The notes beneath the pieces were generated by a model. The model did not search any database and was not told the origin of the DNA. It saw nothing but the letters and a program-made list of their open reading frames with translations. A DNA stretch of 63,202 nt, the filler included, from Octopus bimaculoides (lineage: Eukaryota), in NCBI RefSeq assembly GCF_001194135.2. It is 6 parts of 6 records of this genome, joined end to end, with 100 filler letters (N's around TTAATTAATTAA, not from the genome) between each part and the next. Parts side by side here need not be neighbours in the genome. Positions count along the whole stretch, not along the records: positions 1 to 31,048 come from NC_069010.1; 5 more parts are not named here. One strand, given 5' to 3'. Numbering within the stretch: position 1 is the stretch's first letter; each line of letters opens with the position of its first letter. Below are positions 1,256-29,685 of the stretch, piece by piece. A program made the position numbers and the translations under genes.

Positions 1256-2039
1256 AGATTATAGAAGAGGAAATTGCGAAGAAGCAAAAAGAGTGAAAGA
1301 AAAGAAATAGAGAAGAAAATATTGGAGAAATATAACAACGAAAATCAGAATGAGGAATGGAAGGAGAAGAAAATGAATAAAAATATAATTAGTATAATCA
1401 CACAAACAAAGAGAAACAAACATATATATGTAAATATACACATCCACTTGTACACACAATATCAAACATTGATATAGATAAGCGCACACTCACATTCACG
1501 TACATACATGCACACACTTTCACACACATTCACATACAAAATGCATGAGACAATATGAATAAAGATGAAGAGGGAAGAAAATAAAGATGGGAAGACATTA
1601 AATATTTAGAAATAATCTTGGATAATGTTCCTGATCTTTTTACCATGGAGACATTTGTGACATGCACGAGCGTTGATAAATGCATTTCATGATGACTATT
1701 ATTTATGATAATGATGGTGATGATGATGATGATGATGATGATGATCAACATCATCATCATTATCATCATTGTCATCATTATCGTCGTCGTCGTCGTCATC
1801 ATCATCATCATCATCATCAATAATAGTTATCATAAAATGTAGAAAAAGAAGAACAACAAAACGACAACAAAAACAACAGCAACAACAATAACAGCAACGA
1901 AGGAGTCGATGATGAAGAAAAGATAAAATAAGCAAGAAAACCGCCAAGAAGGACATGCGAAACAATAACAAGACAACTGAGAATGAGGATAGATAGGATA
2001 ATAAAAACATATATATAATTATCACAGATACAAACGTAC

Positions 2040-2165
2040 GTGAGACACACCAAACGTTGTCTTGTGGACAACTGGCTACACTAACACCCTTCTTGAAGAA
2101 ATTGAAACGGAATATGCATCCATCACACTGGACAGTTTCACCAAATTGCCCCTAACTGTATTTCA
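2040..2165 (-). pseudogene. LRRCT-like exon copy 1 (+1 frameshift)
   Basis: tacag acceptor, GTACGT donor, 126 nt. The phase-2 frame gives EIQLGAIW*; the shifted frame gives GQFGETVQCDGCIFRFNFFKKGVSVASCPQDNVWCVS (4 Cys, LRRCT-like). Confidence 0.45.
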
Positions 2166-2503
2166 CTGTATAAATAGAAAATGACTTCCAATTTCAGAAT
2201 GAATATATTTCTATTGGTTTTTTTTAAGTGAGTATAAATTTTTCAAACGAACTCTGCATAAATATATATTTCATAATATACTCACATATTGACACAAAGA
2301 TACATAATTATGCATTCACACACAAAATGTCAGACATTGATGCAGACACGTACAAACATCGTAGAAATCTTCATACATATTCTTGAATATTTTATAGGAG
2401 AATATAGGTTAGAGATACATGCAGACAAATAAAGATGAGAGGTTACTAAATTTCTAGAAAAATTTCGTGAATGAAAATAGTATCAAAAACTTAACTAACT
2501 TAC

Positions 2504-2575
2504 AATATCTCTAAATGTGGAAGATTTTGAAAGGTTCCTTGTGAGATGGTCTTGATCTGATTACCATGAAGATCT
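2504..2575 (-). CDS. 72-nt LRR exon (cassette 1)
   Basis: ttcag|exon|gtaag, phase 2-2; encodes DLHGNQIKTISQGTFQNLPHLEI(L/F). Confidence 0.88.
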
Positions 2576-2867
2576 CTGAAACATAAAACACAGTTCAAAA
2601 GAAAGACTGTAAAAATGGCAGGGACGACGATGAAGAGGAGGCTGGCGATGTTGATGGTAAATGTTGTAATAATGACGGTGAAGAAGAAGAGGATGAGAAT
2701 GATGATGATTATTATCGGAAACAACAAGAAAAGCTACCGATGAATTGATGATGACAACGTTGATTATTATGATGTTCATAACGAAGGTGATGATGATTCT
2801 GCATGCTAGAAATAGCAGAGTAAAGATGTTATTAGGGGACTGGGTCGTATCATTATTGCTGTTGTCC

Positions 2868-2909
<42 letters not shown>

Positions 2910-3010
2910 NNNNNNNNNNNNNNNNNNNNNNNNNNNNNNNNNNNNNNNNNNNNNNNNNNNNNNNNNNNNNNNNNNNNNNNNNNNNNNNNNNNNNNNNNNN
3001 NNNNNNNNNC

Positions 3011-4691
3011 TGAGTGACAAATTTCATCCAGGAATCAAGAAATCAGATACACTTGGCAGTCTATGTTGTCCATTCCAACTACTCAGAGTGCTACTATCTA
3101 AGGTTTCTATTACACAATGTCAAGGGACCCACATCATTTACGGCCTTACGAACGGTTGGTAACACTATGTCAAACATATCGCCAGGCTTGCCATCTCAGA
3201 GGTCTTCTGGAAGATGATGCACACTGGGATGCCACTCTGACAGAGGCACAAATGTGCAAGTCTCCTACGCAGCTGAGAAACCTCTTCTCCATCATGCTGG
3301 TGAACTGTGGATTGTCAAATCCAAATCAACTTTGGGACAAATACAAGGAGGGGCTTTCTGAAGACATTCTTCAAAGAATTCAATATCAGTGTGACGGTGA
3401 TGTCACTTTCAATGATGACATCTTCAATGAGACATTAAGATTAATAGACGACAAGGTTCAATTACTAGGTGGAAACAAATTTGAAATCTATGGTCTTCCA
3501 GCTCCTCCTGTCACAGATGTTCAACACAGGTTAGCACAAAAGCTAATCAGGGAAACATCGTACAACATGGAAAGTTTGCAAGCAGTTGTCAATGAAAAGG
3601 AACCAAGTCTGGTACAGGATCAAAAGGAGGTATACTGGCAAGTTCTTACATCTCTGGACAATAACACTGGTGGGGTTTTCTTCTTAGATGCTCCTGGAAA
3701 CACAGGAAAGACATTATTGATCGACCTGCTCCTTGCCAAGGTGAGACAGAAGAAGATTGCTCTGGCTGTTGCATCCTCTGGAACCAGAGGAACCAGGGCG
3801 GATGAGCTGAGAGCTTGCATCAAGTCCTCATATATCTGGCAACATGTCAAGCAGCTTACTCTGACAACCAACATGAGGGTTCACATTCATGGTGACCTGT
3901 TAGCCGCACAGTTCTCCAACAAGTTACTTGACATTGGAAATGGAAAACTTCCACAAGATCCAGAAGATAATCTGCATCATCTCCCATGTAGCAATATGAC
4001 TGCCTCCCTTGAAGAACTAAAGAGCAAGCTGTTTCCAAACATTGCCACAAACTACAAAAGTCACAAGTGGCTATGTGAAAGAACAATTCTGGCACCAAGG
4101 AATGATTCTGTAGACAAGCTGAATTTAAATTTGTTAACTCAGCTACCAGGACTTGAATGTTCATACAGATCAATTAACTCTATCCCTGATCAAGAACAGG
4201 CAACGCATTACCCAGTGGAGTTCCTCAATTCACTTCAGCCACCAGGATTTCCACCACACATTCTGATCGTGAAAATAGGTGCTCCCATAATGCTATTAAG
4301 AAACCTTGATGCACCTAGACTCTGCAATGGAACAAGGTTGGTTGTTAAACACCCATGCCCCATGTGTTGGAAGCAACAATAATTACAGGCAACATGATGG
4401 GTGAGAATGTCTTCATTCCAAGGATACCTCTCATTTCAAATGATCTCCCCTTTCAGTTCAAGAGACTGCAGTTTCCGGTCAAACTTACCTTTGCAATGTC
4501 TATCAACAAAGCACAAGGTTGAAGGAGGTTAAGTCCCACCACCTTTAGAGATCTAAAGGTGGTGGGACTTAACCTCCTTCAACCTTGCTTCTCACATGGT
4601 CAGCTGTATGTTGGATGTTCTAGAGTTGGAGATGAAAAGAACCTCTACATTCTCAGTGATAAACATGGCAAGACAGAAAACATAGTATATG
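3011..4691 (+). mobile_element. Helitron Pif1-like helicase region, internally deleted and frameshifted
   Basis: YYLRFLLHNVKGPTSF, FFLDAPGNTGKT (Walker A), VASSG, LAPRN, LLRNL..LCNGTRL, FSHGQLYVGCSRV, NIVY. Confidence 0.95.
4514..4587. repeat. Perfect 36-bp inverted repeat with 2-nt spacer
   Basis: 4514-4549 is the exact reverse complement of 4552-4587. Confidence 0.98.
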
Positions 4692-5619
4692 NNNNNNNNN
4701 NNNNNNNNNNNNNNNNNNNNNNNNNNNNNNNNNNNNNNNNNNNNNNNNNNNNNNNNNNNNNNNNNNNNNNNNNNNNNNNNNNNNNNNNNNNNNNNNNNNN
4801 NNNNNNNNNNNNNNNNNNNNNNNNNNNNNNNNNNNNNNNNNNNNNNNNNNNNNNNNNNNNNNNNNNNNNNNNNNNNNNNNNNNNNNNNNNNNNNNNNNNN
4901 NNNNNNNNNNNNNNNNNNNNNNNNNNNNNNNNNNNNNNNNNNNNNNNNNNNNNNNNNNNNNNNNNNNNNNNNNNNNNNNNNNNNNNNNNNNNNNNNNNNN
5001 NNNNNNNNNNNNNNNNNNNNNNNNNNNNNNNNNNNNNNNNNNNNNNNNNNNNNNNNNNNNNNNNNNNNNNNNNNNNNNNNNNNNNNNNNNNNNNNNNNNN
5101 NNNNNNNNNNNNNNNNNNNNNNNNNNNNNNNNNNNNNNNNNNNNNNNNNNNNNNNNNNNNNNNNNNNNNNNNNNNNNNNNNNNNNNNNNNNNNNNNNNNN
5201 NNNNNNNNNNNNNNNNNNNNNNNNNNNNNNNNNNNNNNNNNNNNNNNNNNNNNNNNNNNNNNNNNNNNNNNNNNNNNNNNNNNNNNNNNNNNNNNNNNNN
5301 NNNNNNNNNNNNNNNNNNNNNNNNNNNNNNNNNNNNNNNNNNNNNNNNNNNNNNNNNNNNNNNNNNNNNNNNNNNNNNNNNNNNNNNNNNNNNNNNNNNN
5401 NNNTAATAAATTTACAGCATTGAACCTAATATTCCTCTAATTATTAGACTTTATGGTGTGGCTGCCCCTCCTCTTCTACACATCATGCTCATGACCAAAT
5501 CAGTGAATGGTTGCTGAAATCTATGCTGAAAGCAGATTGGGATCAGGCAATACTTCTGCTTATTCCTGTCTGAAGTATCGTCCGATGAATTTACTTTGTT
5601 GACATGTCGACAAAATTTT

Positions 5620-5751
5620 TATACCTTTCAACCTTTCAATCATGTCCGCCTTTCTTCCAGTAACATACTGTCCATATAATCTTAAATATTTCTTTAACTC
5701 AGGCACAATAAGTATTTCGATAGCTGAATCATCGAATCGCTTTATATCCAT
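5620..5751 (-). other. SAP-domain-like coding fragment, probably TE-derived
   Basis: LIVPELKKYLRLYGQYVTGRKADMIERLKG fits the SAP pattern L.V.ELK..L...G...G.K..LI.RL. Confidence 0.55.
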
Positions 5752-5971
5752 GATAAGACGTAAAACAATAACAATAGCGTAGATAGTCTGCGGAAGTTTA
5801 ATTGTCTACATGGAGCGCCGCCTAGCCAAGGGAGATAACCTACTTATAGGAAAGCCCTATATATCTTCATACACTCTTATATGTAGACTATTTTGTCTTA
5901 TAACATTTTCTACGCATGCGAACAACTGGTAAAAACTTATTTTAATAATGTTTTACCTCCATACTTAAGTA

Positions 5972-6034
<63 letters not shown>

Positions 6035-6051
6035 TGCGTGCGTGCGTGTGT

Positions 6052-6870
6052 GCGGTGAATAAACTGTCGTCTAAATTACGCAAAGATAGAAATAACACTG
6101 ACATCTCATTTTAACAGATATATTTACCAAAATTACAGAAAAATATCTTGAAATACTTAAGAGTAACTTTATTCACTAAAATCGCCATTGGCTTCAACCA
6201 CAACTCCACACGACTTCGGAGTCTCCTTCAACTATTCTGGATGGTCTCCTTGTTTACGTTGGCGAATGCTGCCATAACCTTTGCCTTCAGTCCATCGTTG
6301 GTGTTACAAGGAGTTTTGTTGGTCTCTAGCTCAACTGCGCCCCACATATAATAATCAAGAGGGTCGCAGACTGTGGAGCGAGGTGGCCAGATGTTAGGAA
6401 TTATGTGGTCGCAGAAATTGTCTGACAGCCATGACTTGGTCCTCTGCTCGTGTGGCATGGTGCAGAGTCCTGTTGCCAGACATAGGGTCTTGCAGCAGAC
6501 ACCCTCTGGACTCAAGGCAGCACTACCTCCTCCAGGAAGTTGATGTAGGCCTCCGTGTTGAATCTGAGGCTGTGTGGAAGATGAATGAAAACATAACGTC
6601 GCTATCACTAATGATGACTCCAAACACCATGGTTCTGATTCGATATTTGATTTTTATCACGCTCGGTACATGTCCTCAGATTGCTCTTTTCTCAGATCGA
6701 TACCCAAACACTCTGAAAAGTTTTTATTATACATCCGGCGCGAATGCCTGCAGCAGAGCGTGTCATTTCCGAATTTCTGGAAAGTGAATTGTGATATGGT
6801 GCTGTTTTTCTCACAAACGGTTCCCAACTGACCCTACTATGCTGTGTAGTCTACAAAATCAAAAATAAAC
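6052..6870 (-). mobile_element. Tc1/mariner-superfamily (maT-like) transposon 3' part
   Basis: IWPPRSTVCDPLDYYMWGAVELETNKTPCNT..LKAKV; paralog at 59865-60645. Confidence 0.85.
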
Positions 6871-6918
6871 AATGTGCATGATATAACGACAATTTACCCA
6901 TCACACCTGTATATATAT

Positions 6919-7831
6919 ATTGGGCATTCCATAAATAATTCTGTTTTTCAATTGCATAGACTAAAATCGGTGGGGGACGGGTTAAACTACCTGCATCAAC
7001 TTGCTATAAATGCAGGTAGTAAATTTACGCTATCTTTATTCTTAGTGAAAGTTTTCAAGAATGTAGTCGATATTAACAGTTATATTTTCGAAGCAATAAT
7101 GGAAGTGACAAAGAAGCATATATGCCATATTTTGCTTTATGAGTTCAATAAAGGCAACATCACAATGAAAAGTGCGATGAATATTAATGCAGTATATGGG
7201 GATCGGACAACAAGCGTAAGCCATTGTCAACGGTTATTCCAGAAATTCTGAGCCGGAAACTACAGCCTAGAAGACGAGCCTCGTCCTGGAAGATCTGTAG
7301 AGCTCGTGAGGACGTCCTGTAAACCCTGGTGTAACAAAATCCCACCGTAACCGTTGAGGAACAGCAGAGAAGCTTGGATTTGGTCATTCAACCATTCATT
7401 GACATCTGTGCTAGAGGTAAAACGACCATCTTTGTTTTCAAGACGAAAGATGTTCTTCCATCAGGATAATGCTCGGCTACATGCAGCGAGAGAGACATTC
7501 CAAAGGCTGGAGCAGTTTGAATAGGAAATGATGTCCCATCCACTATATTCACCAGACATTGCCCCATCTGATTATCATTTATTCTGCAGTCTTCAAAATC
7601 ATTAGGACGGAAAAAATATGAATTTTTTAGACGATGTCGGAACAATACTGGACGTGTGTTTTTCGTACGGAAAAGTTAATTTTCGAAAAGGGTCTTTGAA
7701 AGTCTACCAGATAGATGGAAGAACATTGTAGAACATGAAGGAGAGAATACTTCAGAGAAAAAAAGAAATTTTTATCATTTTGAAAAATAAAAGAAGTATA
7801 AAAAACACATTGTTTATGGGATGACCCAATA
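6919..7831 (+). mobile_element. Internally deleted mariner element with both TIRs
   Basis: Imperfect TIRs TATTGGG..CCATAAA at about 6919 and 7801-7831; transposase MEVTKKHICHILLYEFNKG..EDEPRPGRS, HQDNAR, HPLYSPDIAPSDYHLF. Confidence 0.92.
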
Positions 7832-9241
7832 TATATATACATACATATATGCATAACGCACACACATATATGCTTGTCTTTCTGCATGCATGAATGTATG
7901 TATAAATGCAAACGTATGTGGTTATCTATGCTTGTTTAACCCTGAAAGGCTCTGAAACTGTGCTCCTCGAACAAATGGAATTTCATTTTCGAAATCTGAA
8001 TCCCAAATTATAGGTTGTCCATAAATAATCCTTTCTATTATAGGCACAAGGCATAACATTTTGGGGAACGGGACTAGTTAATTTTATCGGTCGCTGTATT
8101 TCACTAGTACTTAATTTATCAACAATTTCTGTGATTCTTTTTCCGTCGTGTGCAGGAATTTTTGCTTGTAACAGCGTTTTTTGGAATCCGGTGTATTTAT
8201 GTTTTTTCTTTCTTTGAACGGATCTGATATTTGATTCGTTAAAGTACTGTGATGTGTTATTTTTCTGGTGGTCAAGATTGTCGTTCTGCCTGATTAGCTT
8301 TCCTATGGGGAACGGTCATCAGTCATTCCAGTTGGTTGATTCTCTTCAAGGGTTATTTTGTTGTATTTGCTGAAGTTCGATTTTGATCGGAGATAAAATT
8401 TCATTGGTCTGGAGTTAGGTGACGTCAGCAACTGGTGTTTGTATGGTTTTATTGTATGGCGATTCGGAGTTGCTATTTCGCAACCCGCGTGGAAGACTGT
8501 TACTAAAATTTATTGAATTGTGATTGTTATATCTCGTTTCTCCTTTTTTGTGGAGAAATTGATTCTTTTTCCCTTCTTATCTTTAATGTTTAAACATAGA
8601 TGAATAAGAGGGAATGAATTAAACGACATTTTTTAATTCCGTAACACTAAGATTGGCACTGCATGCTGTCGCGACCATTGAACATTGTTCAGATGATGTA
8701 ATTAATATATTGCGCAACATTTACCATCTATCGTAGGTGTAAAATACGCTTTTCACGTGAGTATTTCAATAAGTCCTACGTTAGATTATACTATCATTTA
8801 ACAGACACATATTCCACCTTTAATGAATTGTAGTGTTGACATACGATGTTAACTATGTCATCTCATCGATGAATTACAGGTAGGAGGTGTAGATACAATA
8901 GCAGTGATATGGAATAGAGAATGTCATTGAAACCATTCTCTTATTCCTCATCAGCTATGTATGTATGTATGTATGTATGTATGTATGTGTGTATGTATGT
9001 ATGTACCTATCTTTTCTCTTTTTCTTGTTTCAGTCAGTACACACAGTGTTGCAGCGGATTAATCATCTTGTAGTATTTACCTCTACGAATCGACTCCACT
9101 AGCTGTTTTTTGGAAGCCTGGTACTTATCCTGTCGGCCTTATGCCAAACTGCTAATTGTCAGGAATTAAAAGCAACAACATAGGTTGTGAAGAATTAGTG
9201 AGTGCAAACACAGAGACTAAGATACACACACACGCACACAT

Positions 9242-11300: not shown

Positions 11301-12215
11301 TGGATTCNNNNNNNNNNNNNNNNNNNNNNNNNNNNNNNNNNNNNNNNNNNNNNNNNNNNNNNNNNNNNNNNNNNNNNNNNNNNNNNNNNNNNNNNNNNNN
11401 NNNNNNNNNNNNNNNNNNNNNNNNNNNNNNNNNNNNNNNNNNNNNNNNNNNNNNNNNNNNNNNNNNNNNNNNNNNNNNNNNNNNNNNNNNNNNNNNNNNN
11501 NNNNNNNNNNNNNNNNNNNNNNNNNNNNNNNNNNNNNNNNNNNNNNNNNNNNNNNNNNNNNNNNNNNNNNNNNNNNNNNNNNNNNNNNNNNNNNNNNNNN
11601 NNNNNNNNNNNNNNNNNNNNNNNNNNNNNNNNNNNNNNNNNNNNNNNNNNNNNNNNNNNNNNNNNNNNNNNNNNNNNNNNNNNNNNNNNNNNNNNNNNNN
11701 NNNNNNNNNNNNNNNNNNNNNNNNNNNNNNNNNNNNNNNNNNNNNNNNNNNNNNNNNNNNNNNNNNNNNNNNNNNNNNNNNNNNNNNNNNNNNNNNNNNN
11801 NNNNNNNNNNNNNNNNNNNNNNNNNNNNNNNNNNNNNNNNNNNNNNNNNNNNNNNNNNNNNNNNNNNNNNNNNNNNNNNNNNNNNNNNNNNNNNNNNNNN
11901 NNNNNNNNNNNNNNNNNNNNNNNNNNNNNNNNNNNNNNNNNNNNNNNNNNNNNNNNNNNNNNNNNNNNNNNNNNNNNNNNNNNNNNNNNNNNNNNNNNNA
12001 AGAAGAAGAAGAAGAAGAAGAAGAAGAAGAAGAAGAAGAAGAAGAAGAAGAAGAAGAAGAAGAAGAAGAAGAAGAAGAAGAAGAAGAAGAAGAAAACAGA
12101 CACAAGATGGACAAGCAAAACAATAACAAGCCAATTGGGAATGAGGATAGAAATGATAAGAAAAATATATCAACGTAAATAATATCATCACACATACGCA
12201 CAGACACAAACGTAC

Positions 12216-12345
12216 GAGGGAGACATCAAACGTTGTCTTATGTTGTGGACGACTGACTACACTAACATCCTTCCTAAAGAAATTGAAACGGCATATGCAG
12301 CCATCACACTGGACAGTTTCACCAAATTGACCTAGCTGTAGCTCA
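12216..12345 (-). pseudogene. LRRCT-like exon copy 2 (5-nt insertion relative to copy 1)
   Basis: tacag acceptor, GTACGT donor, 130 nt; ELQLGQFGETVQCDGCICRFNFFRKDVSVVSRPQHKTTFDVSL. An AACAT insertion shifts the frame before the NVWCVS motif seen in copy 1. Confidence 0.45.
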
Positions 12346-12784
12346 CTGTACAAATATAAAATGACGACTTCCAATTTCAACACCTCATGTAATTGTAGAG
12401 TTTAAAATAACTCATATTAATGAAGCAGTATCTAAAAAAAAGTGAGAATGAATATACTTCTATACGTTTTTTTTTTAATTTTCTTGAAATGAGCATGAAT
12501 TTTTCAAACAAAATCTGCATAAATATATATTCCGTAATATAACCACCAACAGACACAAATACAAACATACATATTCACATACAATTATACATTTATACAC
12601 AAAATGTTAGACATTAATGCAGATACATACAGACACAAACAATCGTGGACACCTTCATACACTCAGACACGAAAATGGTAGCAGAATATAAGTTAGAGAT
12701 ACAGAGAGAGAAAGAAAGATGAGAAGACATTAAGTCCCAAGAAAATTTTCGTGAATGAAATATCAAAAAATTTAACCAACTTAC

Positions 12785-12856
12785 AATGACTTTAAATTTG
12801 GAAGATTTTCAAAGGCTCCGTGTGACATGGTAGTGATCTGATTGTTTCTAAGATCT
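12785..12856 (-). CDS. 72-nt LRR exon (cassette 2)
   Basis: ttcag|exon|gtaag, phase 2-2; hand translation DLRNNQITTMSHGAFENLPNLKS(L/F). Not in the ORF track. Confidence 0.88.
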
Positions 12857-13739
12857 CTGAAACATAAAACACAGTTCAAAAGAAAGATTGTTAAAAAGAT
12901 TTCTGATAAAATATTAAATCTTGTATCTTCAGAATCATATGAGGAAAAAGAGGACGATGAAGGAGAAAATGGCAGGGATGATGATGATGATGAGGGGGGG
13001 GGCGATGTTGACGGTAAATGTTGTAATAATGACGGTGAGGAGGAAAAGGGTGAGAATGATGACGATTATCATTGAAAACGACGAGAAAAGCTACTGATGA
13101 AATGGTGATGACGACATTAATTATTATGATGTTCATAACGACGGTGATGATGATCCTGAATGCTAGAAATGGCTGAGAAATTGGTGGCTGCGAAGATGGT
13201 ACAATTATTAAACAAATTGGAGGAATGATATTCCAGGTAAAATGTTAAAAATCGTCGAACATAAAAACATATCAACCAACTTAAAAACAAATTCAGGGAA
13301 AAATAGTCACAAGAAGTGAAATTCTCATGGAAGTATTGTACGACACATTTGAGGTACCAACACAGAAACAATTTGTAACTACACGTTCTAGCACCAGAAA
13401 ACGAAAAAGAACGGAAACACTGGAATTGAACCCTAAGCGTAAGAGATATTAAAATTCCGAGCGGAGTTTAATACTCAAGTGGAGAATTTAGGGGAGACTA
13501 ATTCTAAAAAGGAGAGATGTAGTGGAAAGATTCTGACAGCCTTATAACTGACTAAAAGTAGACACACACATTTCCATTAAATAGAGAACTGTCTAGTCGT
13601 AAGCAACTGATTGTGAACAATTTATTGGTAAGCATTTCCCTGTGATCCGTTGGCAGAGAGCTTCGAGTCTCGTGTGATAGTAATCGTATTGTGTCGTGCA
13701 TATAGTTTCTTTCTCCCTCTTCGTTAAATTATATACCCA

Positions 13740-14630: not shown

Positions 14631-14911
14631 AGGTATACACAAATAGAAATGTGTATTGGCTCTGACCCATCGCCTTGGCTTATGAGTTATCAACGATATG
14701 GTTTTCAGACGATGCCATGATTAAATTTTCACACCTGGGAAATAATGATCTCTATATTTACGTATAAAATAATTTTTTTGCTAGAATATTTTTGTTTTCT
14801 AGATATGAAATTGTGACCATGTAAATTTTACAATGTAATTTTTATCTCTTTATGGGGGAAATGGAAAAAAAAGAGTGAATATTCATTCTATTATTGCTGT
14901 GTATTACGAAA

Positions 14912-14981
<70 letters not shown>

Positions 14982-14982
14982 C

Positions 14983-15015
<33 letters not shown>

Positions 15016-15254
15016 AATGATGATGATGACGACGATCATGAATACGATGTTGAAGATTGTTATTATGATGAGGATGAGAAAGCGGATAAGAATGTTGATA
15101 TTGATATATTATCACTGACTACTCTAAGAATTCAGATGAAAAAGAAGAGGAAGAGAAGGAGGAGTAGAGCGAAATGAAAAATTCCTATAGATTACTCAAC
15201 AATAGATTAGTTCAACAAAGGTATTTTCTTTTCCGTTGATCTTTAGCCACTGAA

Positions 15255-15330: not shown

Positions 15331-15530
15331 AAACCGCACAAATCATCTCCATTAGGCAGCCACTTCACCTGTTGGGTTCGGCCCACCATGCCCACCTTCA
15401 CACTTTCATCCTCCTTTCCTATCTCCGAACAAAAAATTGCGGCCATCTTCCACTCCGGATCCATCGACGGTGGGACTCTTCCCACCCCAACTCTGACAAT
15501 TCCTCTGTCTAAACTGTTTATTTTTATTTT
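15330..15530 (+). mobile_element. Possible Penelope-type endonuclease 3' end
   Basis: KPHKSSPLGSHF..IFHSGSI..G resembles a GIY-YIG C-terminus; weak. Confidence 0.35.
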
Positions 15531-15532
15531 CA

Positions 15533-15677
15533 AAATCAGTGAATACATTTCTAAATCAGTGAATACATTTCTAAATCAGTGAATACATTTCTAAATCAGT
15601 GAATACATTTCTAAATCAGTGAATACATTTCTAAATCAGTGAATACATTTCTAAATCAGTGAATACATTTCTAAATC
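15533..15677. repeat. Perfect 20-bp minisatellite (GAATACATTTCTAAATCAGT) x about 7
   Basis: Six identical full units at 15541-15660 plus partial units on both sides. Confidence 0.98.
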
Positions 15678-15842
15678 TCAATACTTTATCGTGTTACTAC
15701 CGTATAAATCTCTTGCCTTCGAAACGCAGAGGAGATGGAACAGGGACAACTGACGAAGGGTTATACTCTTTATGTTGCATGTCTCGTCTCTGCTTTTTTC
15801 GTTGTTCGAAAAAAGTTCGTTTTCTGTTTTCGTTTTTATGTT

Positions 15843-16380
15843 TTCCAATTTCAGCACCTCTTGCAATTATCAAGTTAAAAATAATTCATATTAATGAAGA
15901 AGTATCTAAAAAAAGTGAGAATTAATATATTTCTATACGTTCTTTTCTTTTTTTGAAGTGTGTATAAATTTTTCAAACGAGCTCTGCATAAATATATATT
16001 TCATAATACACCCACATTATAGACACAAATACAAACATACATATTTACATACAATCGTACACTTATAGACAAAATGTTAAACATTGATGCAGAGACATAC
16101 AGACACAAACAATCGTAGACACTTTCATACATATAACAACATGAAAATAGTAGCAGAATATAAGTTAGAGATATAGTGAGAAAAAGAAAGATGAGAAAGT
16201 ATTAAGTTCCTAGAAAAAATTCGTAAATAAAATAGTATCAAAACACTAAACCAACTTACATTTTCTGTAAACTTGGATGATTTTGAAAGACTCCTTGTGG
16301 GAGGGTCTTGATTTGATTTTGACGAAGATTTCTGAAACATAAAACACAGTTCAAAAGAAAAATTGTAAAAAAGTCTTCTG
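15843..16380 (-). repeat. Duplicated LRR cassette, copy 3 (partial, no LRRCT-like exon)
   Basis: Colinear with about 12370-12905. Confidence 0.85.
16260..16331 (-). CDS. 72-nt LRR exon (cassette 3)
   Basis: ttcag|exon|gtaag, phase 2-2; encodes NLRQNQIKTLPQGVFQNHPSLQK(I), one 24-aa extracellular LRR. Confidence 0.88.
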
Positions 16381-17400
16381 AATGAAATAGCTGTACCTTA
16401 AAAACAGAGACATTCTTGTTTATCCCTGGAATACATTTGCAGAGTGACTCGCATACACATTGTGCCATCTAGTTCTAATGAGTTATCCACTTCTATTCCC
16501 TCATGGAAAGTTCGGATGGCACTGTGAGATTCTACATGTGGCGAAACACAGAACATCCGCTCGCAATCGACTCACGATGCAATTGAGGGTTGCAAATTGC
16601 AGTACCTTGGGGACCATCAGGCACAGTTGTTCGTAGAGTGGGGCAATGGACTTATGGACTATCTGCAGAGAGGAGCTGATGAGAATGTTGAGCCAGGAGC
16701 AGTCCTCAGAATATGCATTAATATTATCAGGATGCAATGGCGATTGTAGCAAAGTATGGTAAACCTGATTTATTTGTCACGTATACATGCAACCCTAAGT
16801 GCCGTGAGATAGAAAATAATCTGAAGCGAAATGCGTCTTCTGGAACCCGACCAGATTTGGTTGCAAGAGTGTACAAGTTGCATCTCACCAAAGTTCTGAA
16901 GGATATAAAGGACGTAATTGATGTATTAATAGCTCATGCCCATATCATCGTGTTTCAAAAGAGAGGACTTCCAAACTGTCACATTCTGGTAGACAAAGTG
17001 TAGATCAGAGATTATGTAGATAGAATGGCATCAGCAGAAATTTCTCATTCAAATGATGGCCCCCGTCTTGCATAATTTAATTAAGAAATTCATGATACAT
17101 GGCCTTTGTATGGGGAATGGCGCTTGGGCCCAAAATGTTTCCCAAGAACTATAGAAATGAGACACTCCTAAATATTAATGGATATCCAGATTACAGGAGG
17201 CGCAATAATGGGATCACAGCACAAGTTGAATGCCACTCTGTTGACAGCAGGTATGTTGTTCCATACAATTCTTACCTGTTAAAGCAATTCCGAGCTCATA
17301 TTGATATGGAAGTTTGCTCCTCTGTAAAAAGTGCGAAGTACATCTGCAAGTATGTCTACAAAGGTCAAGATAGCGGTTTAGGTGAGGTAAGGAATGATGC
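16381..17400 (+). mobile_element. Helitron Rep (HUH endonuclease) region, degenerate
   Basis: YYQDAMAIVAKYGKPDLFVTYTCNP (motif 1), FQKRGLPNCHILV (motif 2), VVPYN..AHIDMEVCSSVKSAKYICKYVYKG (motif 3). Shares sequence with about 14085-14250. Confidence 0.93.
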
Positions 17401-17611
17401 GACGGCAAAAGGCAAGCAAATTCACAAAACCATGGTGAAATCATCAATTATTGGGTTGGCAACTAAGTTCCTGTTTTTTTTTTTATTTTGGAATTTATTG
17501 CATTTTAAAATTTTGGAATCTATTTTTTTCGAGAATTCTATTTTTGAATCATTTTGTAATCTATTTGTTTTTTTACCATTTAATTTTAGTTAATTTTTGT
17601 TTATTTTTCAG

Positions 17612-18430: not shown

Positions 18431-18432
18431 AT

Positions 18433-18484
<52 letters not shown>

Positions 18485-20189: not shown

Positions 20190-20252
<63 letters not shown>

Positions 20253-22121: not shown

Positions 22122-22158
<37 letters not shown>

Positions 22159-22689
22159 TTACATAGATATAATGCTGCAAATAAACACACATGGGATTGA
22201 CATATAAAATATACCTAGATATACACATGTAGACATATATAGAGTTGCATTTATATAAAGATAGAGAGGGAGGGGGAGAGAGAGGAAAACGGAGAGAGAA
22301 TGACCGAGAAAGAAAAATTAAACTATTTAGTAGATCAACACTCGCTTAAAAGCATATAGATATTTATAGACTTGAAGATTAGAATAGCTTGGGGTAAAAA
22401 GAATACAGAAAACTAAGGAAAGGGAGCATGGTAATTCCGATCCTACAACCGTGTCTGGGGAGTCGGAATTACAAAACGTTTGTAATTTCGGCAGATGGAG
22501 TATGCTAGAAGTCAACGATGTGCAAGCATTAGTGAATGTATGTAGACATTACCGTAAACCCGGTCTCTGTTCTCGGAGTTAATTGAACGGCAACTAGTGG
22601 TGGTGGTCAATGAAAAGAGCTATTAGATTTCAGTTGATTAGGTTTAGTATAGAAATAGTATATGAGTATTCTAAAGTAGAGGAACAGCT

Positions 22690-24951: not shown

Positions 24952-27168
24952 TAGTGTTTCCCAAACTTATCGTGCCAAATTGTAATATCGCCCACCTATC
25001 AGCGAAAAAATGTTCCATCACCCACCTGTGTAAAAAGAAAATCCGTGACACAACCTCCAACACAAAATTCCCTAGAACCCCCCCTCCCTGCATCATTTGA
25101 CACACACATTATATCGTAGGCCCGTTGCCCTGATTGTGCTGTTTGGACTAAATATGCGGTTGTTTACAAATCCTTTATCGGGGTTTAATTTAACCATTAG
25201 TGTAAATAAAATTCTAGCGTTAACTCTATATTATGCAGACAAATTGACTTCTGGAAACTTTCGCCTTTCTTTTACACTGATTTTCATTTTCTCCAAATGA
25301 ACCATTGATCAGAGCTACCGATGCGAAAATAATGATTGTATTATAAAGGAAAAGAATAAAACTTTTTAATGAGAACCATGTGTCTGGTGCGATGCAGCTA
25401 GTGCAGATACATTCGGTTTCAAACTTGTCGACTTTAGCCGCAAATCTCTTCATTGTATCACATCCAGTCCAATTCTTTTATGGGAAAATAAAATTCCAAC
25501 ATGGTTAAAACCAGATTCAACCAGGTATGATGGAAACAAAAGTAATTTCAGCTGTTTCCACAGATTGGGATAGGAATTCGATATACTCTGATGGTACCAC
25601 AAACCTTCTTTGACATAGCGTCATTGCTATTTTTAAATTCTATCAATTCCTCCTAAAAATCATCCTCGCAATCGACTGCATCGACCTCAAATGGATTGCT
25701 ATACCAATTTGGAATATTCAGCGCAATAACATCTTGAAATCGTTCCACCATGTTATCGTGCAATGATTGTAAATAGTTGTGATATGTTGTTAAATCCTCA
25801 TCGATCAATTCCTCTTTCAAAGAATCAAGTTGTGGAAATTGATGGAATTGAAGTTTTGAAATTTTAGTCTTAAACAACACCAATTTCAATGAAGCGGATA
25901 GTGGAGTATTTTCAGTGAAAAAGATATTATATGAAACAGTTCAACAAAGCGTAAAACACAGCTTCCTTTTGACAGCCTCCGCACCTCGGTATGGTATAAG
26001 AGTTTAGTATGGTCCTCATCATTTCTCAGACAGAGTTGACAGAAAATTCGATCAGACAAGGGACTGGACTTCAATTTGTTCACAGTCTTGATAACTAACT
26101 GTAGCGCATCATTCAATCTACTGTTCATACTTGTTGCCACTAAATGCTGCCGGTGTGCCAAGCAATGAACAGTTAGTATCTGGTGTGAAATTTCACGCGC
26201 TTTAGGAGAGATGAAAAACTCTGTATCTTCCTATCATTGAAGGGGCTTCATCAGACGCACAGACAGGGATATTACGTTCAAAAATGAAAGGCTTGAGAGT
26301 GTGAAAAATCGTTGCACCTTTTGAATCAAGCGGCAATTTCTCTGTGAACAGTAATTCCTCATAAGTATGAAGGTCTTCGCTGAAATACCGAACATATACC
26401 ATCATCAAACATTGATTATCGACAACAATTGACTCATCCACTTGTATAGAAAATTCAGAACGCTAGAGAATATTAATAAGCTGATGTTCGACATCGTTGG
26501 CCATTTCATCGATGCGTCGAGAAATTGTGTTATTACTAAGTGGGATTTTTTTTCATAATGTTATCGCGTTTTTTGTGCATAACAGTTGACAAAACCTCTT
26601 CGATAACTGGGGGCGAAGTAATGTTTCTCCAATTGTGTGAGACTTCCCAGACATAGCAACAAGCAATGCAATGCTGTACGATGCAATCAACCCGTCATTC
26701 TTTTGTTTACTAGTTTTCTGGAGTAGCATGTTGAATGTTTGTATTTGCTTTTTGAAAGAGGAGCTCAGTTACAAAATGTATGATAACGGTTTATCCTTCT
26801 TGTCAGAACGCTTTGCATCAAAGTGATACTTCAAGCATGAGGGTTTCATTGCTTCATTGGTCAATGTTTGATGGCAAAGAAGACACATTGGTGCCTGACA
26901 GTTCTGAGGAGAAGAAATAAATCCAAATGATAAATAATCGCTACTGTACTGTCGACAAATGTTCTTGACTGGTGACGTCAATAAAGTGAAAATGCGAAAA
27001 CGAATTTCTATAGACGGCATCAGAAAAGCAGTATGGCATTCCCAAAGAGAAGAAGAAGTCAATAGTGCAGAGTCAGATGACACAATTTTACTGGAGCAAA
27101 TACGGATCTAGTTCGTTTGGCTACCAGCATTCCAAAAGTTAAAGTTTATCGAAAGTTTTAGAACTTGG
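24952..27168 (-). mobile_element. Degenerate hAT (Buster/Charlie-like) transposon
   Basis: CRQYSSDYLSFGF..PMCLLC..LTNEAMKPS, DES..QCLMMVYVRY..EELLF, AHRQHLV..VIKTVNKLK..LLYHTEVRRLSKG, NPF. TIR-like TAGTGTTTCCCAAACT at 24952; right end degraded, no TSD seen. Confidence 0.92.
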
Positions 27169-28154
27169 CACATTAATATTTCTTTCCAAGTTAAATTGCT
27201 GGAGTTATTCAACTTTTTCCAGAAAAATGTTTTTAAAAAGTTATGGAGATTTAAAGTTTAATCATTTTCACCCAGTCAAGAAATACGATTTCAAAGCTGT
27301 CCTTTTGTGCGTGACTGCACATTTTGTCAACATCCTGAAAATAACACTTGTGTTTTGATATGANNNNNNNNNNNNNNNNNNNNNNNNNNNNNNNNNNNNN
27401 NNNNNNNNNNNNNNNNNNNNNNNNNNNNNNNNNNNNNNNNNNNNNNNNNNNNNNNNNNNNNNNNNNNNNNNNNNNNNNNNNNNNNNNNNNNNNNNNNNNN
27501 NNNNNNNNNNNNNNNNNNNNNNNNNNNNNNNNNNNNNNNNNNNNNNNNNNNNNNNNNNNNNNNNNNNNNNNNNNNNNNNNNNNNNNNNNNNNNNNNNNNN
27601 NNNNNNNNNNNNNNNNNNNNNNNNNNNNNNNNNNNNNNNNNNNNNNNNNNNNNNNNNNNNNNNNNNNNNNNNNNNNNNNNNNNNNNNNNNNNNNNNNNNN
27701 NNNNNNNNNNNNNNNNNNNNNNNNNNNNNNNNNNNNNNNNNNNNNNNNNNNNNNNNNNNNNNNNNNNNNNNNNNNNNNNNNNNNNNNNNNNNNNNNNNNN
27801 NNNNNNNNNNNNNNNNNNNNNNNNNNNNNNNNNNNNNNNNNNNNNNNNNNNNNNNNNNNNNNNNNNNNNNNNNNNNNNNNNNNNNNNNNNNNNNNNNNNN
27901 NNNNNNNNNNNNNNNNNNNNNNNNNNNNNNNNNNNNNNNNNNNNNNNNNNNNNNNNNNNNNNNNNNNNNNNNNNNNNNNNNNNNNNNNNNNNNNNNNNNN
28001 NNNNNNNNNNNNNNNNNNNNNNNNNNNNNNNNNNNNNNNNNNNNNNNNNNNNNNNNNNNNNNNNNNNNNNNNNNNNNNNNNNNNNNNNNNNNNNNNNNNN
28101 NNNNNNNNNNNNNNNNNNNNNNNNNNNNNNNNNNNNNNNNNNNNNNNNNNNNNN

Positions 28155-28188
<34 letters not shown>

Positions 28189-28334
28189 TGTATGTATGTA
28201 TGCATGTATGTATATGTATATATTTTGTGTTTAAAGCTATAACATCAACAATATAAGCGTTTAGCTGAGAACATAATCAATAAGAATTTAAAACATTGGA
28301 TGTGGAAAATACGTAGAAAGCGTCAAATACTTAC

Positions 28335-28534
28335 AAATTTTCAACAGTTGGCGGAATCGGTTGGGGTACTGATGTTAATTGACGAGAACCACAATCTACA
28401 TTTCCATTTGACTTGCAAGAACACTTTGTGCATATATCTGCACCAGCATGAACCTCCAAAACCAATATCGTATACAGTATCAGCACGAAAGTTTGCTTAT
28501 ATGATAGTATGTGGCGGAACATATATTCAGGCAT
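28335..28534 (-). CDS. First coding exon of an extracellular LRR protein: signal peptide + LRRNT
   Basis: Reads MPEYMFRHILSYKQTFVLILYTILVLEVHAG-ADICTKCSCKSNGNVDCGSRQLTSVPQPIPPTVEN(L): hydrophobic leader then an LRRNT-type CxxCxC...VDC...LTSVP..IP motif. Strong acceptor ttttcttctcttacag ends just 5' of 28542; donor GTAAG follows 28335 in phase 2, matching the LRR exons. Confidence 0.9.
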
Positions 28535-29685
28535 AGATTAATCTGTAAGAGAAGAAAATAGAAAATATCAGAGACTTCAATGTTATTGTCCTCACGCTGC
28601 AGATTCTTTTAAAGAATTGAAGTTCACCCCTGTTCATTCTGACGAATATATCTTTATTTTCATTATTTAATATTTAAAGATACAAAACTAAATTTCGATA
28701 AAGTAGTATGGAGCATTTTATTATAGATTATAGCATTAATGGGAGATAATATCAAATAAACCTGAACACCAAAAACCCTCACCTACAAACACAAACACAC
28801 ATACATACAGAGATAAACACAACTTTACACATTCACAAGCAGTAATCATACTTGGCGGATCTACTATAAAATTAATGAATCGTAAGTTTTGTGTACTGTA
28901 AAAATGTGTTGCCCCTAAACCCAGTTGGGCCGCTAAATCCGATGGGTCCCCACAAGCAACTGTATTGTAACGAATGATTTCTTTTTTATACACCCCGGGT
29001 TGGGAAGCGTTCTTACAAATTCTTCATCAAATATGCTTTGATGATTTCATTTTACTAACTTTTTTCTACAAAACGAGAACAAAGAATGAAGATAGATTTC
29101 CATGAAAATAATCTTCCTTCACCTTCCAACAGAGATTTTCATAGGAAAGACCTTACTGCAACTGACCATCTCACACTCAGTGCCATCACCCTCATCTCCC
29201 TCCATTACTACTTCTACTACTACTACTGCTGCTGCTGCTGCTTCTGCTGCTTCTGCTGCTTCTGCTGCTTCTGCTGCTGCTGCTACTGCTGCTTCTGCTG
29301 CTGCTGTTGTTGTTGTTATTGTGACAGTGAACTGGAGGAATCATTATTACACCGAACGAAATGTTTAATCGCATTTCTTCCGACTTTGTACGTTCCGAAT
29401 TCAAATAACACCAAGATCGACTTTGCCTTTCATTCTTTCGAAGTGGGTAAGATAAGGCATCGGTGAAGTACTGTGAGTCGATGTAACTGACTTGCATCTC
29501 CTCTCGAAAAATTGCTGGCCTTGTGCCAAAATTTGAAACCATTGTTTTGTTTTGTTGTTTTCATTCCTGTTTTTGTGTTGCTCGCTTTGATTAAATAATA
29601 TAAGTATACATAAATACGTACACACATATATAACTATATAGACACAAACATAATTAAACGCCTACATACATATAAAGCAGATGTA

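What the first reader, a model, noticed from the sequence alone, without database searches (positions are those of the whole stretch)
1940..28542. Secreted/surface LRR gene built from duplicated single-LRR exon cassettes
Seen: one SP+LRRNT exon upstream of three paralogous exon+intron cassettes, each with a 72-nt phase-2 LRR exon; two also carry a downstream LRRCT-like exon. All junctions are phase-compatible: splicing gives ..VENL-NLRQNQI..LQKI-DLRNNQI.., perfect LxxLxLxxNxI registers. The 29-nt acceptor region TTTCTTTTGAACTGTGTTTTATGTTTCAG is identical in all three copies. Inference: a modular array in which one constant 5' exon can be spliced to alternative LRR/LRRCT cassettes. That logic resembles Dscam or protocadherin arrays, and the domain layout (SP-LRRNT-LRR-LRRCT) resembles jawless-fish VLRs. 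More cassettes may lie in the gaps or left of the window.
Basis: partly seen in the sequence, partly recalled or inferred. Interest (0 to 1): 0.75.

Follow-up and report, generated by a model that had tools for sequence, protein, structure and literature searches.

The report
Octopus LRR receptor gene, duplicated exons

Summary
On the minus strand there is one signal-peptide/LRRNT exon (28542-28335) and three 72-nt phase-2 LRR exons (C 16331-16260, B 12856-12785, A 2575-2504). All three have an identical 29-nt acceptor and a GTAAGTT donor, and they sit in paralogous exon+intron cassettes that are 75-86% identical. The two "LRRCT-like exons" are not exons: indels of 1 and 5 nt break their frame, and they have no Pfam or profile match and no relation to the family's real LRRCT. 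The window is Octopus bimaculoides CM046630.1. NCBI splits the locus into a truncated 115-aa model (exon 1+C+B, ending by read-through of a donor) and LOC106880013 (cassette A, a fourth LRR, the true LRRCT and a Cys-rich module, all left of the window). Full-length octopus relatives span both halves, so this is most likely one gene. It belongs to an octopus family of LRR-LRRCT-Cys-rich proteins, several members of which continue into GAIN-GPS-7TM (adhesion-GPCR type). Across the family the variable region is always a whole number of 24-aa units (1-10). RefSeq isoforms of O. sinensis paralogues differ by whole units, so in-series cassette skipping is plausible. Dscam-like, protocadherin-like or VLR-like mechanisms are not supported. 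Verdict: a new member of a known kind, of moderate interest.

The parts
28335..28542 (-). Exon carrying the start codon, signal peptide and LRRNT (C-x2-C-x-C-x8-C). It ends ..VEN + TT (phase 2) with donor GTAAGT. It is preceded by an acceptor (..TTACAG|ATTAATCT) that is conserved in paralogues, so a non-coding exon must lie upstream. The conserved start is probably the second ATG (28522, MFRH..).
   Evidence: 48-55% identity to N-termini of P0009/P0011/P0014/P0032; Pfam LRRNT sub-threshold
16260..16331 (-). LRR exon C, 72 nt, phase 2/2: (L)NLRQNQIKTLPQGVFQNHPSLQK(I). It has His where the family has a core Leu.
12785..12856 (-). LRR exon B, 72 nt, phase 2/2: DLRNNQITTMSHGAFENLPNLKS(L). The NCBI model P0001 ends here by reading through the donor (TTG TAA).
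2504..2575 (-). LRR exon A, 72 nt, phase 2/2: DLHGNQIKTISQGTFQNLPHLEI(L). It is used in the NCBI model LOC106880013 (P0002).
16332..16360 (-). Identical 29-nt branch/polypyrimidine/acceptor region, copy C
12857..12885 (-). Identical 29-nt acceptor region, copy B
2576..2604 (-). Identical 29-nt acceptor region, copy A
15842..16389 (-). Cassette C (exon + flanking intron), 83% identical to B. The B-to-C spacing of 3475 nt equals the length of the segment 12369-15843, as expected for a simple tandem duplication.
12001..13180 (-). Cassette B (exon + flanking intron). It runs into a (CTT)n microsatellite and then a gap.
1841..2823 (-). Cassette A (exon + flanking intron), 75-85% identical to B
2023..2167 (-).
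12199..12347 (-).
3051..3073 (-). 23-nt first exon of NCBI model P0002 (MDNIDCQ-). It has no signal peptide and a weak GTATCT donor, and is most likely an annotation device to supply an ATG.
3117..4691 (+). PIF1-type helicase ORF (Helitron-like transposon remnant) inside the B-to-A intron; not part of the gene product
6228..7251 (.). Mariner/Mos1-type transposon remnants (HTH_48 on the + strand) inside the B-to-A intron

Best explanation
The window is the 5' half of a single Octopus bimaculoides gene on the minus strand. The gene belongs to an octopus family with the layout signal peptide - LRRNT - variable number of LRRs - constant terminal LRR (..YEDGAFLFLPSI..) - LRRCT - Cys-rich module, and in several members this continues into HRM/GAIN/GPS/7TM (adhesion-GPCR type). 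Exon 1 makes the signal peptide and N-cap. Each internal LRR is one 72-nt exon with phase 2 at both ends. The three internal exons here (C, B, A) arose by tandem duplication of an exon together with 0.5-1 kb of its introns. The terminal LRR, the true LRRCT and the Cys-rich exons lie 6-30 kb beyond the left edge of the window. Every cassette is symmetric and carries the same strong acceptor and donor, so any number of copies, or any subset, splices in frame and simply lengthens or shortens the LRR solenoid. That is how LRR number varies between paralogues (1-10 units) and, probably, between isoforms. After duplication the exons diverged faster than their introns, mostly by amino-acid changes at non-scaffold positions, which fits diversification of a ligand-binding surface. 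Shown: the exons, phases, cassette paralogy, the identity of the locus, the family architecture and the 24-aa modularity. Inferred: that the two NCBI models are one gene, that the cassettes are all included or alternatively skipped in vivo, the receptor function, and the 7TM continuation for this particular copy.
For: Locus identity: the window is 100% identical to CM046630.1. P0001 = exon 1+C+B and ends at TTG-TAA, the donor read as a stop. P0002 = cassette A + LRR4 (L001:19081) + LRRCT (L001:25080) + Cys-rich exons. Both models lie on the same strand, 9.7 kb apart. One gene: full-length relatives P0009, P0011 and P0014 cover 99-100% of the merged protein, and window exon 1 is 48-55% identical to their N-termini. 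Family architecture: Pfam and context show LRR models followed on the same strand by GAIN_ADGRA3/GPS/7tm_2 models at L003 and L004, and P0032 carries both LRR and 7tm_2. Modularity: the variable region is exactly 1, 2, 3, 4, 5, 7, 9 or 10 x 24 aa in nine relatives. Paralogues have 72-nt phase-2 LRR exons (AG|72 nt|GT in L005; matching 24-aa units and similar acceptors in L003). Splicing: O. sinensis isoform lengths are 409/385/361/337 and 525/501/477, and the exon-usage matrix is. Divergence: exon 72-78% vs intron 82-86% vs acceptor 95% identity; pN/pS 1.4-2.3. Fold: the AF2 model of paralogue P0023 gives a confident capped LRR solenoid. Literature: an octopus-specific adhesion-GPCR expansion with LRRs in some members, tandem clusters, positive selection, and expression in axial nerve cord, suckers and skin (PMC6408891).
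Against: There are no transcript data for this gene, so the join of B to A across a 10-kb, TE-rich intron with four gaps is inferred. NCBI annotates two genes. No clear 1:1 orthologue with this exon 1 exists among O. sinensis or O. vulgaris models. Exon C has His at a core Leu position, so it could be a poorer or skipped unit. SEA-like, HRM, GAIN and 7TM exons were not found downstream on the gene's strand. That region is about 40% N, one HRM-like fragment sits on the opposite strand, and the last homologue search found no adjacent model. pN/pS rests on 23 codons per pair. Some RefSeq isoforms of the paralogue contain mid-exon chimeric units that look like artefacts.
Confidence: 0.75

Rival explanations
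1. One reading: a diversifying array in which the constant 5' exon is spliced to alternative LRR (+LRRCT) cassettes, one per transcript, in the manner of Dscam or protocadherin clusters, giving a repertoire of short SP-LRRNT-LRR-LRRCT proteins.
For: The cassettes are symmetric and phase-compatible and share an identical acceptor. In the O. sinensis paralogue, exon 1 is joined to exon 0, 1, 2, 3 or 5 in different RefSeq isoforms.
Against: The LRRCT-like stretches are not coding. The real LRRCT is a single constant exon. P0001 and all relatives use the units in series. No docking/selector complementarity exceeds shuffled controls (limited by a 791-nt gap). All cassette splice sites are strong consensus sites, as in constitutive exons.
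Confidence: 0.05
2. Two separate genes, as annotated: a short upstream gene (exon 1+C+B), and a downstream gene that starts with its own signal/LRRNT exon hidden in one of the ~700-nt gaps between B and A.
For: NCBI calls two models. Three gaps of 692-738 N between B and A could each hide a 200-nt exon. The family is tandemly duplicated elsewhere.
Against: The upstream 'gene' would lack the terminal LRR, LRRCT and everything else that every family member has, and its stop is a read-through of a consensus donor. P0002's own first exon is 23 nt with no signal peptide. Both models share strand and order, and together they reconstitute exactly the family layout.
Confidence: 0.12
3. A decaying, non-functional family member: the cassettes are relics and nothing is expressed.
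For: The locus is full of transposon remnants. Exon C carries Leu->His at a core position. No clear orthologue was found, the downstream exons are not recovered, and there is a stray paralogous Cys-rich exon.
Against: All four window exons and the five downstream exons with family homology (L001:19081 to 32743) have open frames and intact AG/GT sites. All family-invariant Cys/His/Pro positions of the LRRCT and Cys-rich module are kept in P0002. The acceptor regions are more conserved than neutral intron.
Confidence: 0.1
4. An assembly artefact: the three cassettes are uncollapsed haplotypes or mis-scaffolded copies of one exon.
For: The assembly is heavily gapped, and the gaps are flanked by microsatellites.
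Against: The copies differ by 14-28% and encode different peptides. B and C are 3.5 kb apart on one uninterrupted contig. A gap-free O. sinensis paralogue shows 11 such exons in tandem.
Confidence: 0.02

Closest known systems
Octopus-specific adhesion-GPCR expansion ('group 3' of Ritschard et al. 2019, PMC6408891); NCBI names its members 'ADGRG6-like', 'slit-like', 'LRRC15-like' or 'decorin-like'
   Same: Octopus-only family in tandem clusters. N-terminal LRRs are followed, in several members, by GAIN_ADGRA3/GPS/7tm_2. The window gene shares the family's exon 1, terminal LRR, LRRCT and Cys-rich module.
   Different: The paper analysed the 7TM parts and saw LRRs in only 5 of 22 sequences. It does not describe the LRR exon arrays, the 24-aa modularity or the LRR isoforms. 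For the window gene itself a 7TM part was not found. I did not test whether the family here is exactly their group 3.
Exon-modular LRR arrays: brown-alga LRR-ROCO genes (PMC3341825, PMC11378527) and gonadotropin/LGR receptors (as cited in PMC11378527); human NLR LRR exon modularity (PMC6642158)
   Same: One LRR per exon, and in the ROCO and gonadotropin-receptor cases phase 2 (72 nt in ROCO). The array grows by tandem exon duplication or shuffling, the exons show signs of diversifying change, and whole-repeat alternative splicing is possible or observed.
   Different: A different protein context (extracellular capped LRR with LRRNT/LRRCT on an adhesion-GPCR-type gene, in an animal). Here whole exon+intron cassettes are still recognisably paralogous.
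Vertebrate ADGRA2/ADGRA3 (GPR124/GPR125)
   Same: Adhesion GPCRs with N-terminal LRRs + LRRCT, an HRM and a GAIN domain. Pfam's GAIN_ADGRA3 model hits family members.
   Different: ADGRA proteins have an Ig domain after the LRRCT (my knowledge). The octopus family has instead a 12-Cys module ending CC..LCN (Ly6/uPAR-like by pattern only; PDB sequence hit to LYPD1 at E=0.83, AF2 pLDDT 30-40). LRR number is fixed in ADGRA and variable here.
Lamprey/hagfish variable lymphocyte receptors
   Same: The same capped-LRR fold class: the top Foldseek hits of paralogue P0023 include VLRs at target-normalised TM 0.55-0.78. LRR number is variable.
   Different: VLR diversity comes from somatic DNA assembly of cassettes that lack splice sites into an incomplete germline gene. 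Here the cassettes are ordinary exons with AG/GT sites in a complete gene. Slit2, LRRTM2 and Nogo receptor match the fold equally well.
Dscam1 / clustered protocadherins
   Same: Tandem arrays of paralogous exons that could diversify a surface receptor.
   Different: Usage is not mutually exclusive, no docking/selector pairing was found, the cassettes are not promoter-bearing first exons, and the units add in series.

Membership tests
Capped extracellular LRR domain (LRRNT-LRR-LRRCT) | Tandem LRRs with the LxxLxLxxNxI consensus | tested here: met
   Pfam LRR_8 at 4e-33 for the spliced product
Capped extracellular LRR domain (LRRNT-LRR-LRRCT) | N-terminal signal peptide and four-Cys LRRNT cap | tested here: inconclusive
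   The hydrophobic core + HAG|AD and C-x2-C-x-C-x8-C can be read from the sequence. Pfam LRRNT gives only 14.7 bits against a cut-off of 25.8, and relatives score 16-21 bits. No signal-peptide predictor was available.
Capped extracellular LRR domain (LRRNT-LRR-LRRCT) | C-terminal four-Cys LRRCT cap | tested here: inconclusive
The cap is not in the window. The family LRRCT exon (KCGCHLPAFV..C..C) is at L001:25080. Pfam LRRCT does not hit it. The AF2 model of paralogue P0023 aligns over about 200 columns with capped VLR and Slit domains.
Octopus LRR-LRRCT-Cys-rich (adhesion-GPCR-type) family | Family-type exon 1, constant terminal LRR ..YEDGAFLFLPSI.., LRRCT KCGCHLPAFV, and a Cys-rich module ending CC..LCNKNDF | tested here: met
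Octopus LRR-LRRCT-Cys-rich (adhesion-GPCR-type) family | Variable region = a whole number of 24-aa units, each a 72-nt phase-2 exon | tested here: met
   3 units here; 1-10 units in nine relatives; exon structure at L003 and L005
Adhesion GPCR | GAIN/GPS domain and 7tm_2 domain in the same gene | tested here: inconclusive
   Present in relatives (P0032; the models adjacent at L003 and L004). Not found downstream of this gene, where the sequence is about 40% N.
Dscam-type mutually exclusive exon cluster | Exactly one exon of the cluster per mRNA | tested here: not met
   The NCBI model P0001 contains C and B in series, and relatives contain 1-10 units in series. This rests on gene models, not on reads.
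Dscam-type mutually exclusive exon cluster | A docking site after the constant exon that is complementary to a selector upstream of each variant | tested here: not met
   The longest helices are 8-16 nt, within the shuffle range. A 791-nt gap hides most of the region right after exon 1.
Clustered protocadherin-type array | Each variable exon is a first exon with its own promoter, spliced to shared constant exons | tested here: not met
   The cassettes are internal 72-nt exons with acceptors, and the constant exon is 5'.
Jawless-fish VLR | An incomplete germline gene, with flanking cassettes that lack splice sites and are copied in somatically | tested here: not met
   Every cassette has consensus AG/GTAAGT sites and splices in frame. 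Somatic rearrangement itself cannot be tested with these tools.
Exon-modular LRR arrays (ROCO / LGR type) | One LRR per 72-nt exon, phase 2, expanded by tandem exon duplication | tested here: met
   definition from PMC3341825 and PMC11378527
Exon-modular LRR arrays (ROCO / LGR type) | Alternative splicing of whole LRR exons | not testable with these tools
   There are no transcript data for this gene. RefSeq isoforms of O. sinensis paralogues step by 24 aa, but some look artefactual.

The most novel reading that the evidence does not exclude
The octopus LRR/adhesion-GPCR-type family uses its arrays of symmetric 72-nt LRR exons combinatorially. Exon 1 is joined to different proximal LRR exons and units are skipped, so each gene yields many receptor ectodomains of different length and surface. 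On this reading the fast, mostly non-synonymous divergence of freshly duplicated exons is selected. That would be a splicing-based recognition repertoire in octopus nervous or sensory tissue, parallel to the protocadherin expansion, and the window gene would be a small (3-unit) member of it.
Probability: 0.2. Interest if true: 0.7.

Novelty: new member of a known kind. Interest (0 to 1): 0.4.

Why it matters
For this locus, the result corrects the annotation: two NCBI models, one ending in a read-through donor and one lacking a signal peptide, are most likely one receptor gene. It also removes a false lead, the in-window LRRCT exons and the VLR/Dscam-like logic. For the family, LRR number is a freely adjustable parameter set by duplication of a one-repeat exon, and RefSeq already predicts up to 13 whole-repeat isoforms per gene in O. 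sinensis. If long reads confirm those isoforms, this octopus-specific receptor expansion, already linked to arm nerve cord, suckers and skin, would gain a second layer of ectodomain diversity. I found no paper describing that.

Tried and rejected
(1) Extra exons: a six-frame regex scan and a permissive tblastn for further LRR, LRRNT or LRRCT exons in the window found none.
(2) LRRCT-like stretches as coding sequence or as relics of the true LRRCT: rejected by Pfam, hhalign and Smith-Waterman against shuffles.
(3) Docking/selector RNA pairing: nothing above shuffled controls.
(4) Uncollapsed haplotypes: rejected by the 14-28% divergence and by B and C lying on one contig.
(5) Helitron capture of the cassettes: a PIF1-type helicase ORF lies next to cassette A. 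But the cassettes are co-oriented, in phase, and follow the family's tandem design seen at TE-independent paralogous loci, so I treated the TEs as ordinary intron insertions. Helitron termini were not searched.
(6) Fold of the Cys-rich module: AF2 confidence was too low (pLDDT 30-40), there is no Pfam hit, and the only PDB sequence hit is LYPD1 at E=0.83. 'Ly6/uPAR-like' therefore remains a reading of the cysteine pattern.
(7) The 7TM continuation of this gene: tblastn of HRM/GAIN/7TM parts on L001 and the third homologue search found nothing adjacent on the gene's strand.
(8) Loci of P0007 and P0012 could not be fetched because only the longest isoforms are indexed. P0032's gene (119 kb) was too long to fetch.
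(9) An orthologue carrying this exon 1 in O. sinensis or O. vulgaris: none among the hits.


Full report
**1. What is in the sequence**

Reading that strand gives:
- An exon from an acceptor at 28542, with the ATG at 28534, to 28335. It encodes a hydrophobic signal-like N-terminus, then C-x2-C-x-C-x8-C, then ..PPTVEN plus two bases, with donor GTAAGT.
- Three 72-nt exons: C 16331-16260, B 12856-12785, A 2575-2504. Each follows the identical 29-mer and is followed by GTAAGTT. Each starts with the third base of a codon and ends with two bases (phase 2 at both ends).

Joined in series they read ..VENL NLRQNQIKTLPQGVFQNHPSLQKI DLRNNQITTMSHGAFENLPNLKSL DLHGNQIKTISQGTFQNLPHLEIL. This scores 4e-33 against Pfam LRR_8. 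Pfam LRRNT is only sub-threshold on exon 1 (14.7 bits).

**2. Gaps**

- The piece has nine N runs.
- No exon touches one; the nearest gap edge is 181 nt from exon 1.
- B and C sit on one uninterrupted contig (12000-18718), so that duplication is certain.
- Exon 1 and cassette A are attached only by scaffolding, with 1667 N between exon 1 and C and 2242 N between B and A. Hidden 72-nt exons cannot be excluded.

**3. The cassettes are paralogous exon+intron units**

- Self-BLAST and a three-way alignment show A~B over 1841-2823 / 12001-13180 (75-85%) and B~C over 12369-12913 / 15843-16389 (83%).
- The B-to-C spacing (3475 nt) equals the length of the segment 12369-15843, as a simple tandem duplication predicts.
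- Divergence of 14-28% and different peptides rule out uncollapsed haplotypes.
- The acceptor's 30-column invariant run is the longest in the alignment (next longest 18). Three-way invariance is 92% for the 40 nt before the exon, 74% for the downstream intron and 67% for the exon.
- Pairwise, the exons are 72-78% identical against 82-86% for the first 100 nt of intron. Most exon changes are non-synonymous (pN/pS 1.4-2.3 on 23 codons). The scaffold residues L2, N5, I7, G13, F15 and L21 are kept.

**4. The 'LRRCT-like exons' are not exons**

- The stretches (about 2167-2023 and 12347-12199) are well conserved as DNA (128/144 = 89%, against 77% for the neighbouring intron; Fisher p = 0.007).
- A and B differ by a 1-nt and a 5-nt indel. 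As a result the frame after the first two cysteines differs, B has lost the last two cysteines, and in A a phase-2 splice hits a stop.
- They have no Pfam hit. hhalign probability against the family profile is 1%, and that alignment is not even to the LRRCT. DNA similarity to the real LRRCT exons is within the shuffle range.
- Cassette C lacks the stretch altogether.
- I treat it as a conserved intronic element of unknown role.

**5. Where the window comes from and what is annotated**

The conceptual protein hits two Octopus bimaculoides models.
- P0001 (115 aa, 'LINGO-like') is exon 1+C+B and stops at TTG-TAA, i.e. it reads through B's consensus donor.
- P0002 (LOC106880013, 238 aa) starts with a 23-nt exon (window 3073-3051, no signal peptide). 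It continues with cassette A, then a fourth 72-nt LRR exon (ELQNNQIQEYEDGAFLFLPSIKKL), then a four-Cys LRRCT-type exon (..KCGCHLPAFV..C..C), two exons of a 12-Cys module ending CCNGALCN, and a tail.

Both models lie on the same strand of CM046630.1 (GCA_001194135.2), 9.7 kb apart. The window is 100% identical to that record, and window position w equals L001 position 13074-w. All exons after A lie 6-30 kb beyond the window's left edge.

**6. One gene, and which family**

- A search with the merged protein finds O. vulgaris, O. sinensis and O. bimaculoides proteins of 450-560 aa, three of which (P0009, P0011, P0014) cover 99-100% of it.
- Window exon 1 is 48-55% identical to their N-termini, and the L001 exons match their C-terminal parts.
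- The family layout is SP-LRRNT-(LRR)n-terminal LRR 'YEDGAFLFLPSI'-LRRCT-Cys-rich module, then a further region.
- In several members an HRM (weak), GAIN_ADGRA3, GPS and 7tm_2 follow. These occur either in one model (P0032) or as the next model on the same strand (L003: 180 bp later; L004: LRR model, Cys-rich model and GAIN/GPS/7TM model in a row).
- This fits the octopus-specific adhesion-GPCR expansion of Ritschard et al. 2019. That expansion forms tandem clusters, shows positive selection, is expressed in axial nerve cord, suckers and skin, and had LRRs detected in 5 of 22 sequences (PMC6408891). I did not test identity with their 'group 3'.
- For the window gene itself no HRM/GAIN/7TM exon was found downstream on its strand. 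That region is broken into 100-1100-nt pieces, and an HRM-like exon start lies reversed at L001:49884-49928. Whether this copy is a full adhesion GPCR or a shorter secreted or anchored protein is open.

**7. Modularity across the family**

- In nine relatives the segment between ..VE[YN]L and the terminal LRR is exactly 1, 2, 2, 3, 4, 5, 7, 9 or 10 x 24 aa. The window gene has 3.
- Paralogue L003 has 72-nt LRR exons with a similar acceptor (TTTCTTATGAACTCACTTT..TGTTGCAG|A).
- The gap-free O. sinensis locus L005 has 11 tandem AG|72 nt|GT phase-2 LRR exons. They fall into two alternating types, each with its own near-identical acceptor, and ten of the eleven donors are GTAAGTT.

**8. Alternative splicing**

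- RefSeq lists 13 isoforms for the L005 gene with lengths 409, 385 (x4), 361 (x5) and 337 (x3). For another O. sinensis gene, isoforms X3-X9 are 525, 525, 501, 501, 501, 477 and 477 aa. Every step is 24 aa.
- Mapping units to exons: X1 = 1 2 4 5 6 7 8 9; X3 = 2 4 5-9; X5 = 2 3 5-9; X6 = 2 5-9; X9 = 1 5-9; X10 = 3 5-9; X11 = 5-9; X12 = 1 5 7 8 9.
- Caveat: five isoforms contain 'units' that join the first half of an upstream exon (at L005:9069) to the second half of another exon. That is the signature of template switching or alignment ambiguity between near-identical repeats, so the isoform set is suggestive, not proof.
- For the window gene no isoform is on record. Its three exons are more diverged, and all have strong consensus sites.
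- A direct test for Dscam-type docking/selector pairing found nothing above shuffles.

**9. Structure**

- AF2 on paralogue P0023 with a 24-sequence family alignment gives a confident LRRNT-LRR-LRRCT solenoid (pLDDT about 85-98) and an unmodelled Cys-rich module (pLDDT 30-40).
- Foldseek against the PDB returns VLRs, Slit2 D2/D3, LRRTM2, Nogo receptor and Slitrk with similar scores.
- The VLR likeness is therefore that of the whole capped-LRR class.
- The Cys-rich module resembles Ly6/uPAR domains only by its cysteine pattern (LYPD1 at E=0.83; no Pfam hit).

**10. Comparison with known systems, and verdict**

- One LRR per 72-nt phase-2 exon, expansion by exon duplication or shuffling, diversifying change and whole-repeat alternative splicing are all described for brown-alga LRR-ROCO genes (PMC3341825, PMC11378527).
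- The latter paper also cites the all-phase-2 LRR exons of gonadotropin receptors. Exonic modularity of LRRs as a precondition for splicing is shown for human NLRs (PMC6642158).
- The octopus adhesion-GPCR expansion is published.
- My searches did not find a description of LRR exon arrays and whole-unit isoforms on this octopus family.
- The window finding is thus a real but fairly ordinary structure: a new member of a known kind. It carries a corrected gene model and one family-level lead worth testing with long reads.

Noticed in passing
window 2023-2167 and 12199-12347 (minus strand): An intronic element downstream of LRR exons A and B is conserved at 89%, against 77% for the neighbouring intron (Fisher p=0.007). 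It is absent from cassette C and from paralogous loci L003 and L004. It is not coding, and its role (splicing regulator, gene-conversion tract, or chance) is unknown.
   Followed up: partly
window 3117-4382 and 4559-4691 (+): A 421-aa ORF with PIF1 helicase and Pif1_2B domains (1.5e-20, 1.2e-16), continuing up to a gap. It is a Helitron-type transposon remnant in the B-to-A intron. An ORF at 17099-17593 (+) looks like Helitron Rep by eye but has no Pfam hit.
   Followed up: partly
window 6228-7251: Mariner/Mos1 remnants: HTH_48 at 6874-7251 (+) (3e-13), and a transposase-C-terminal-like ORF at 6228-6623 (-) with no Pfam hit.
   Followed up: partly
window 28535-28580 (minus strand); L003:2956-3000; L005:4941-5000: A polypyrimidine tract + TTACAG acceptor just upstream of the ATG is conserved in three paralogues, so a non-coding 5' exon must exist further upstream. 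In L005 the first ATG is ACG, so the conserved start is the second ATG (window 28522, MFRH..).
   Followed up: partly
window 16278-16280 (codon CAT in exon C): Exon C has His where the family and exons A and B have the core Leu of F-x-x-L (FQNHPSL against FxNLPxL). It is a single-base change that might weaken this repeat.
   Followed up: no
L001:36243-36398 (outside the window, about 23 kb left of it): A second, paralogous copy of the Cys-rich exon (QPVCRFTLSTNGVTLKTEKSC.., 74% aa identity to the one used in P0002), followed at once by a gap. It may be a partial duplication or a neighbouring gene fragment.
   Followed up: no
L001:49884-49928 (minus strand of the locus): The start of an HRM-type exon (..VVCDESTTSANNRTF), reversed relative to the gene and running into a 4.4-kb gap. 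Either a mis-oriented contig of the same gene or a tail-to-tail neighbour.
   Followed up: partly
L005 (O. sinensis) 9069-9137, 26605-26676, 29604-29675: Two intact 72-nt LRR exons (at 26605 and 29604) are used by none of the 13 RefSeq isoforms. The exon at 9069 appears only as the first half of chimeric units. The family's 'YEDGAFLFLPSI' terminal LRR is missing from this gene's models.
   Followed up: partly
window 12000-12110, 2870-2909, 14875-15100, 15528-15687: Long microsatellites, (CTT)n and (TAA)n, abut the assembly gaps. There is also a long trinucleotide tract (GAT-type, inferred from the poly-Asp reading of the + strand ORF 14875-15177) and a 20-nt tandem repeat (gatttagaaatgtattcact). 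These simple repeats probably caused the assembly breaks.
   Followed up: no
L003 and L004 (O. bimaculoides CM046627.1 and CM046630.1 at 3.0 Mb): At two other family loci the NCBI annotation also splits what looks like one LRR-adhesion-GPCR gene into two or three consecutive same-strand models (LRR / Cys-rich / GAIN-GPS-7TM). This would explain why LRRs were detected in only a few members in earlier surveys.
   Followed up: partly
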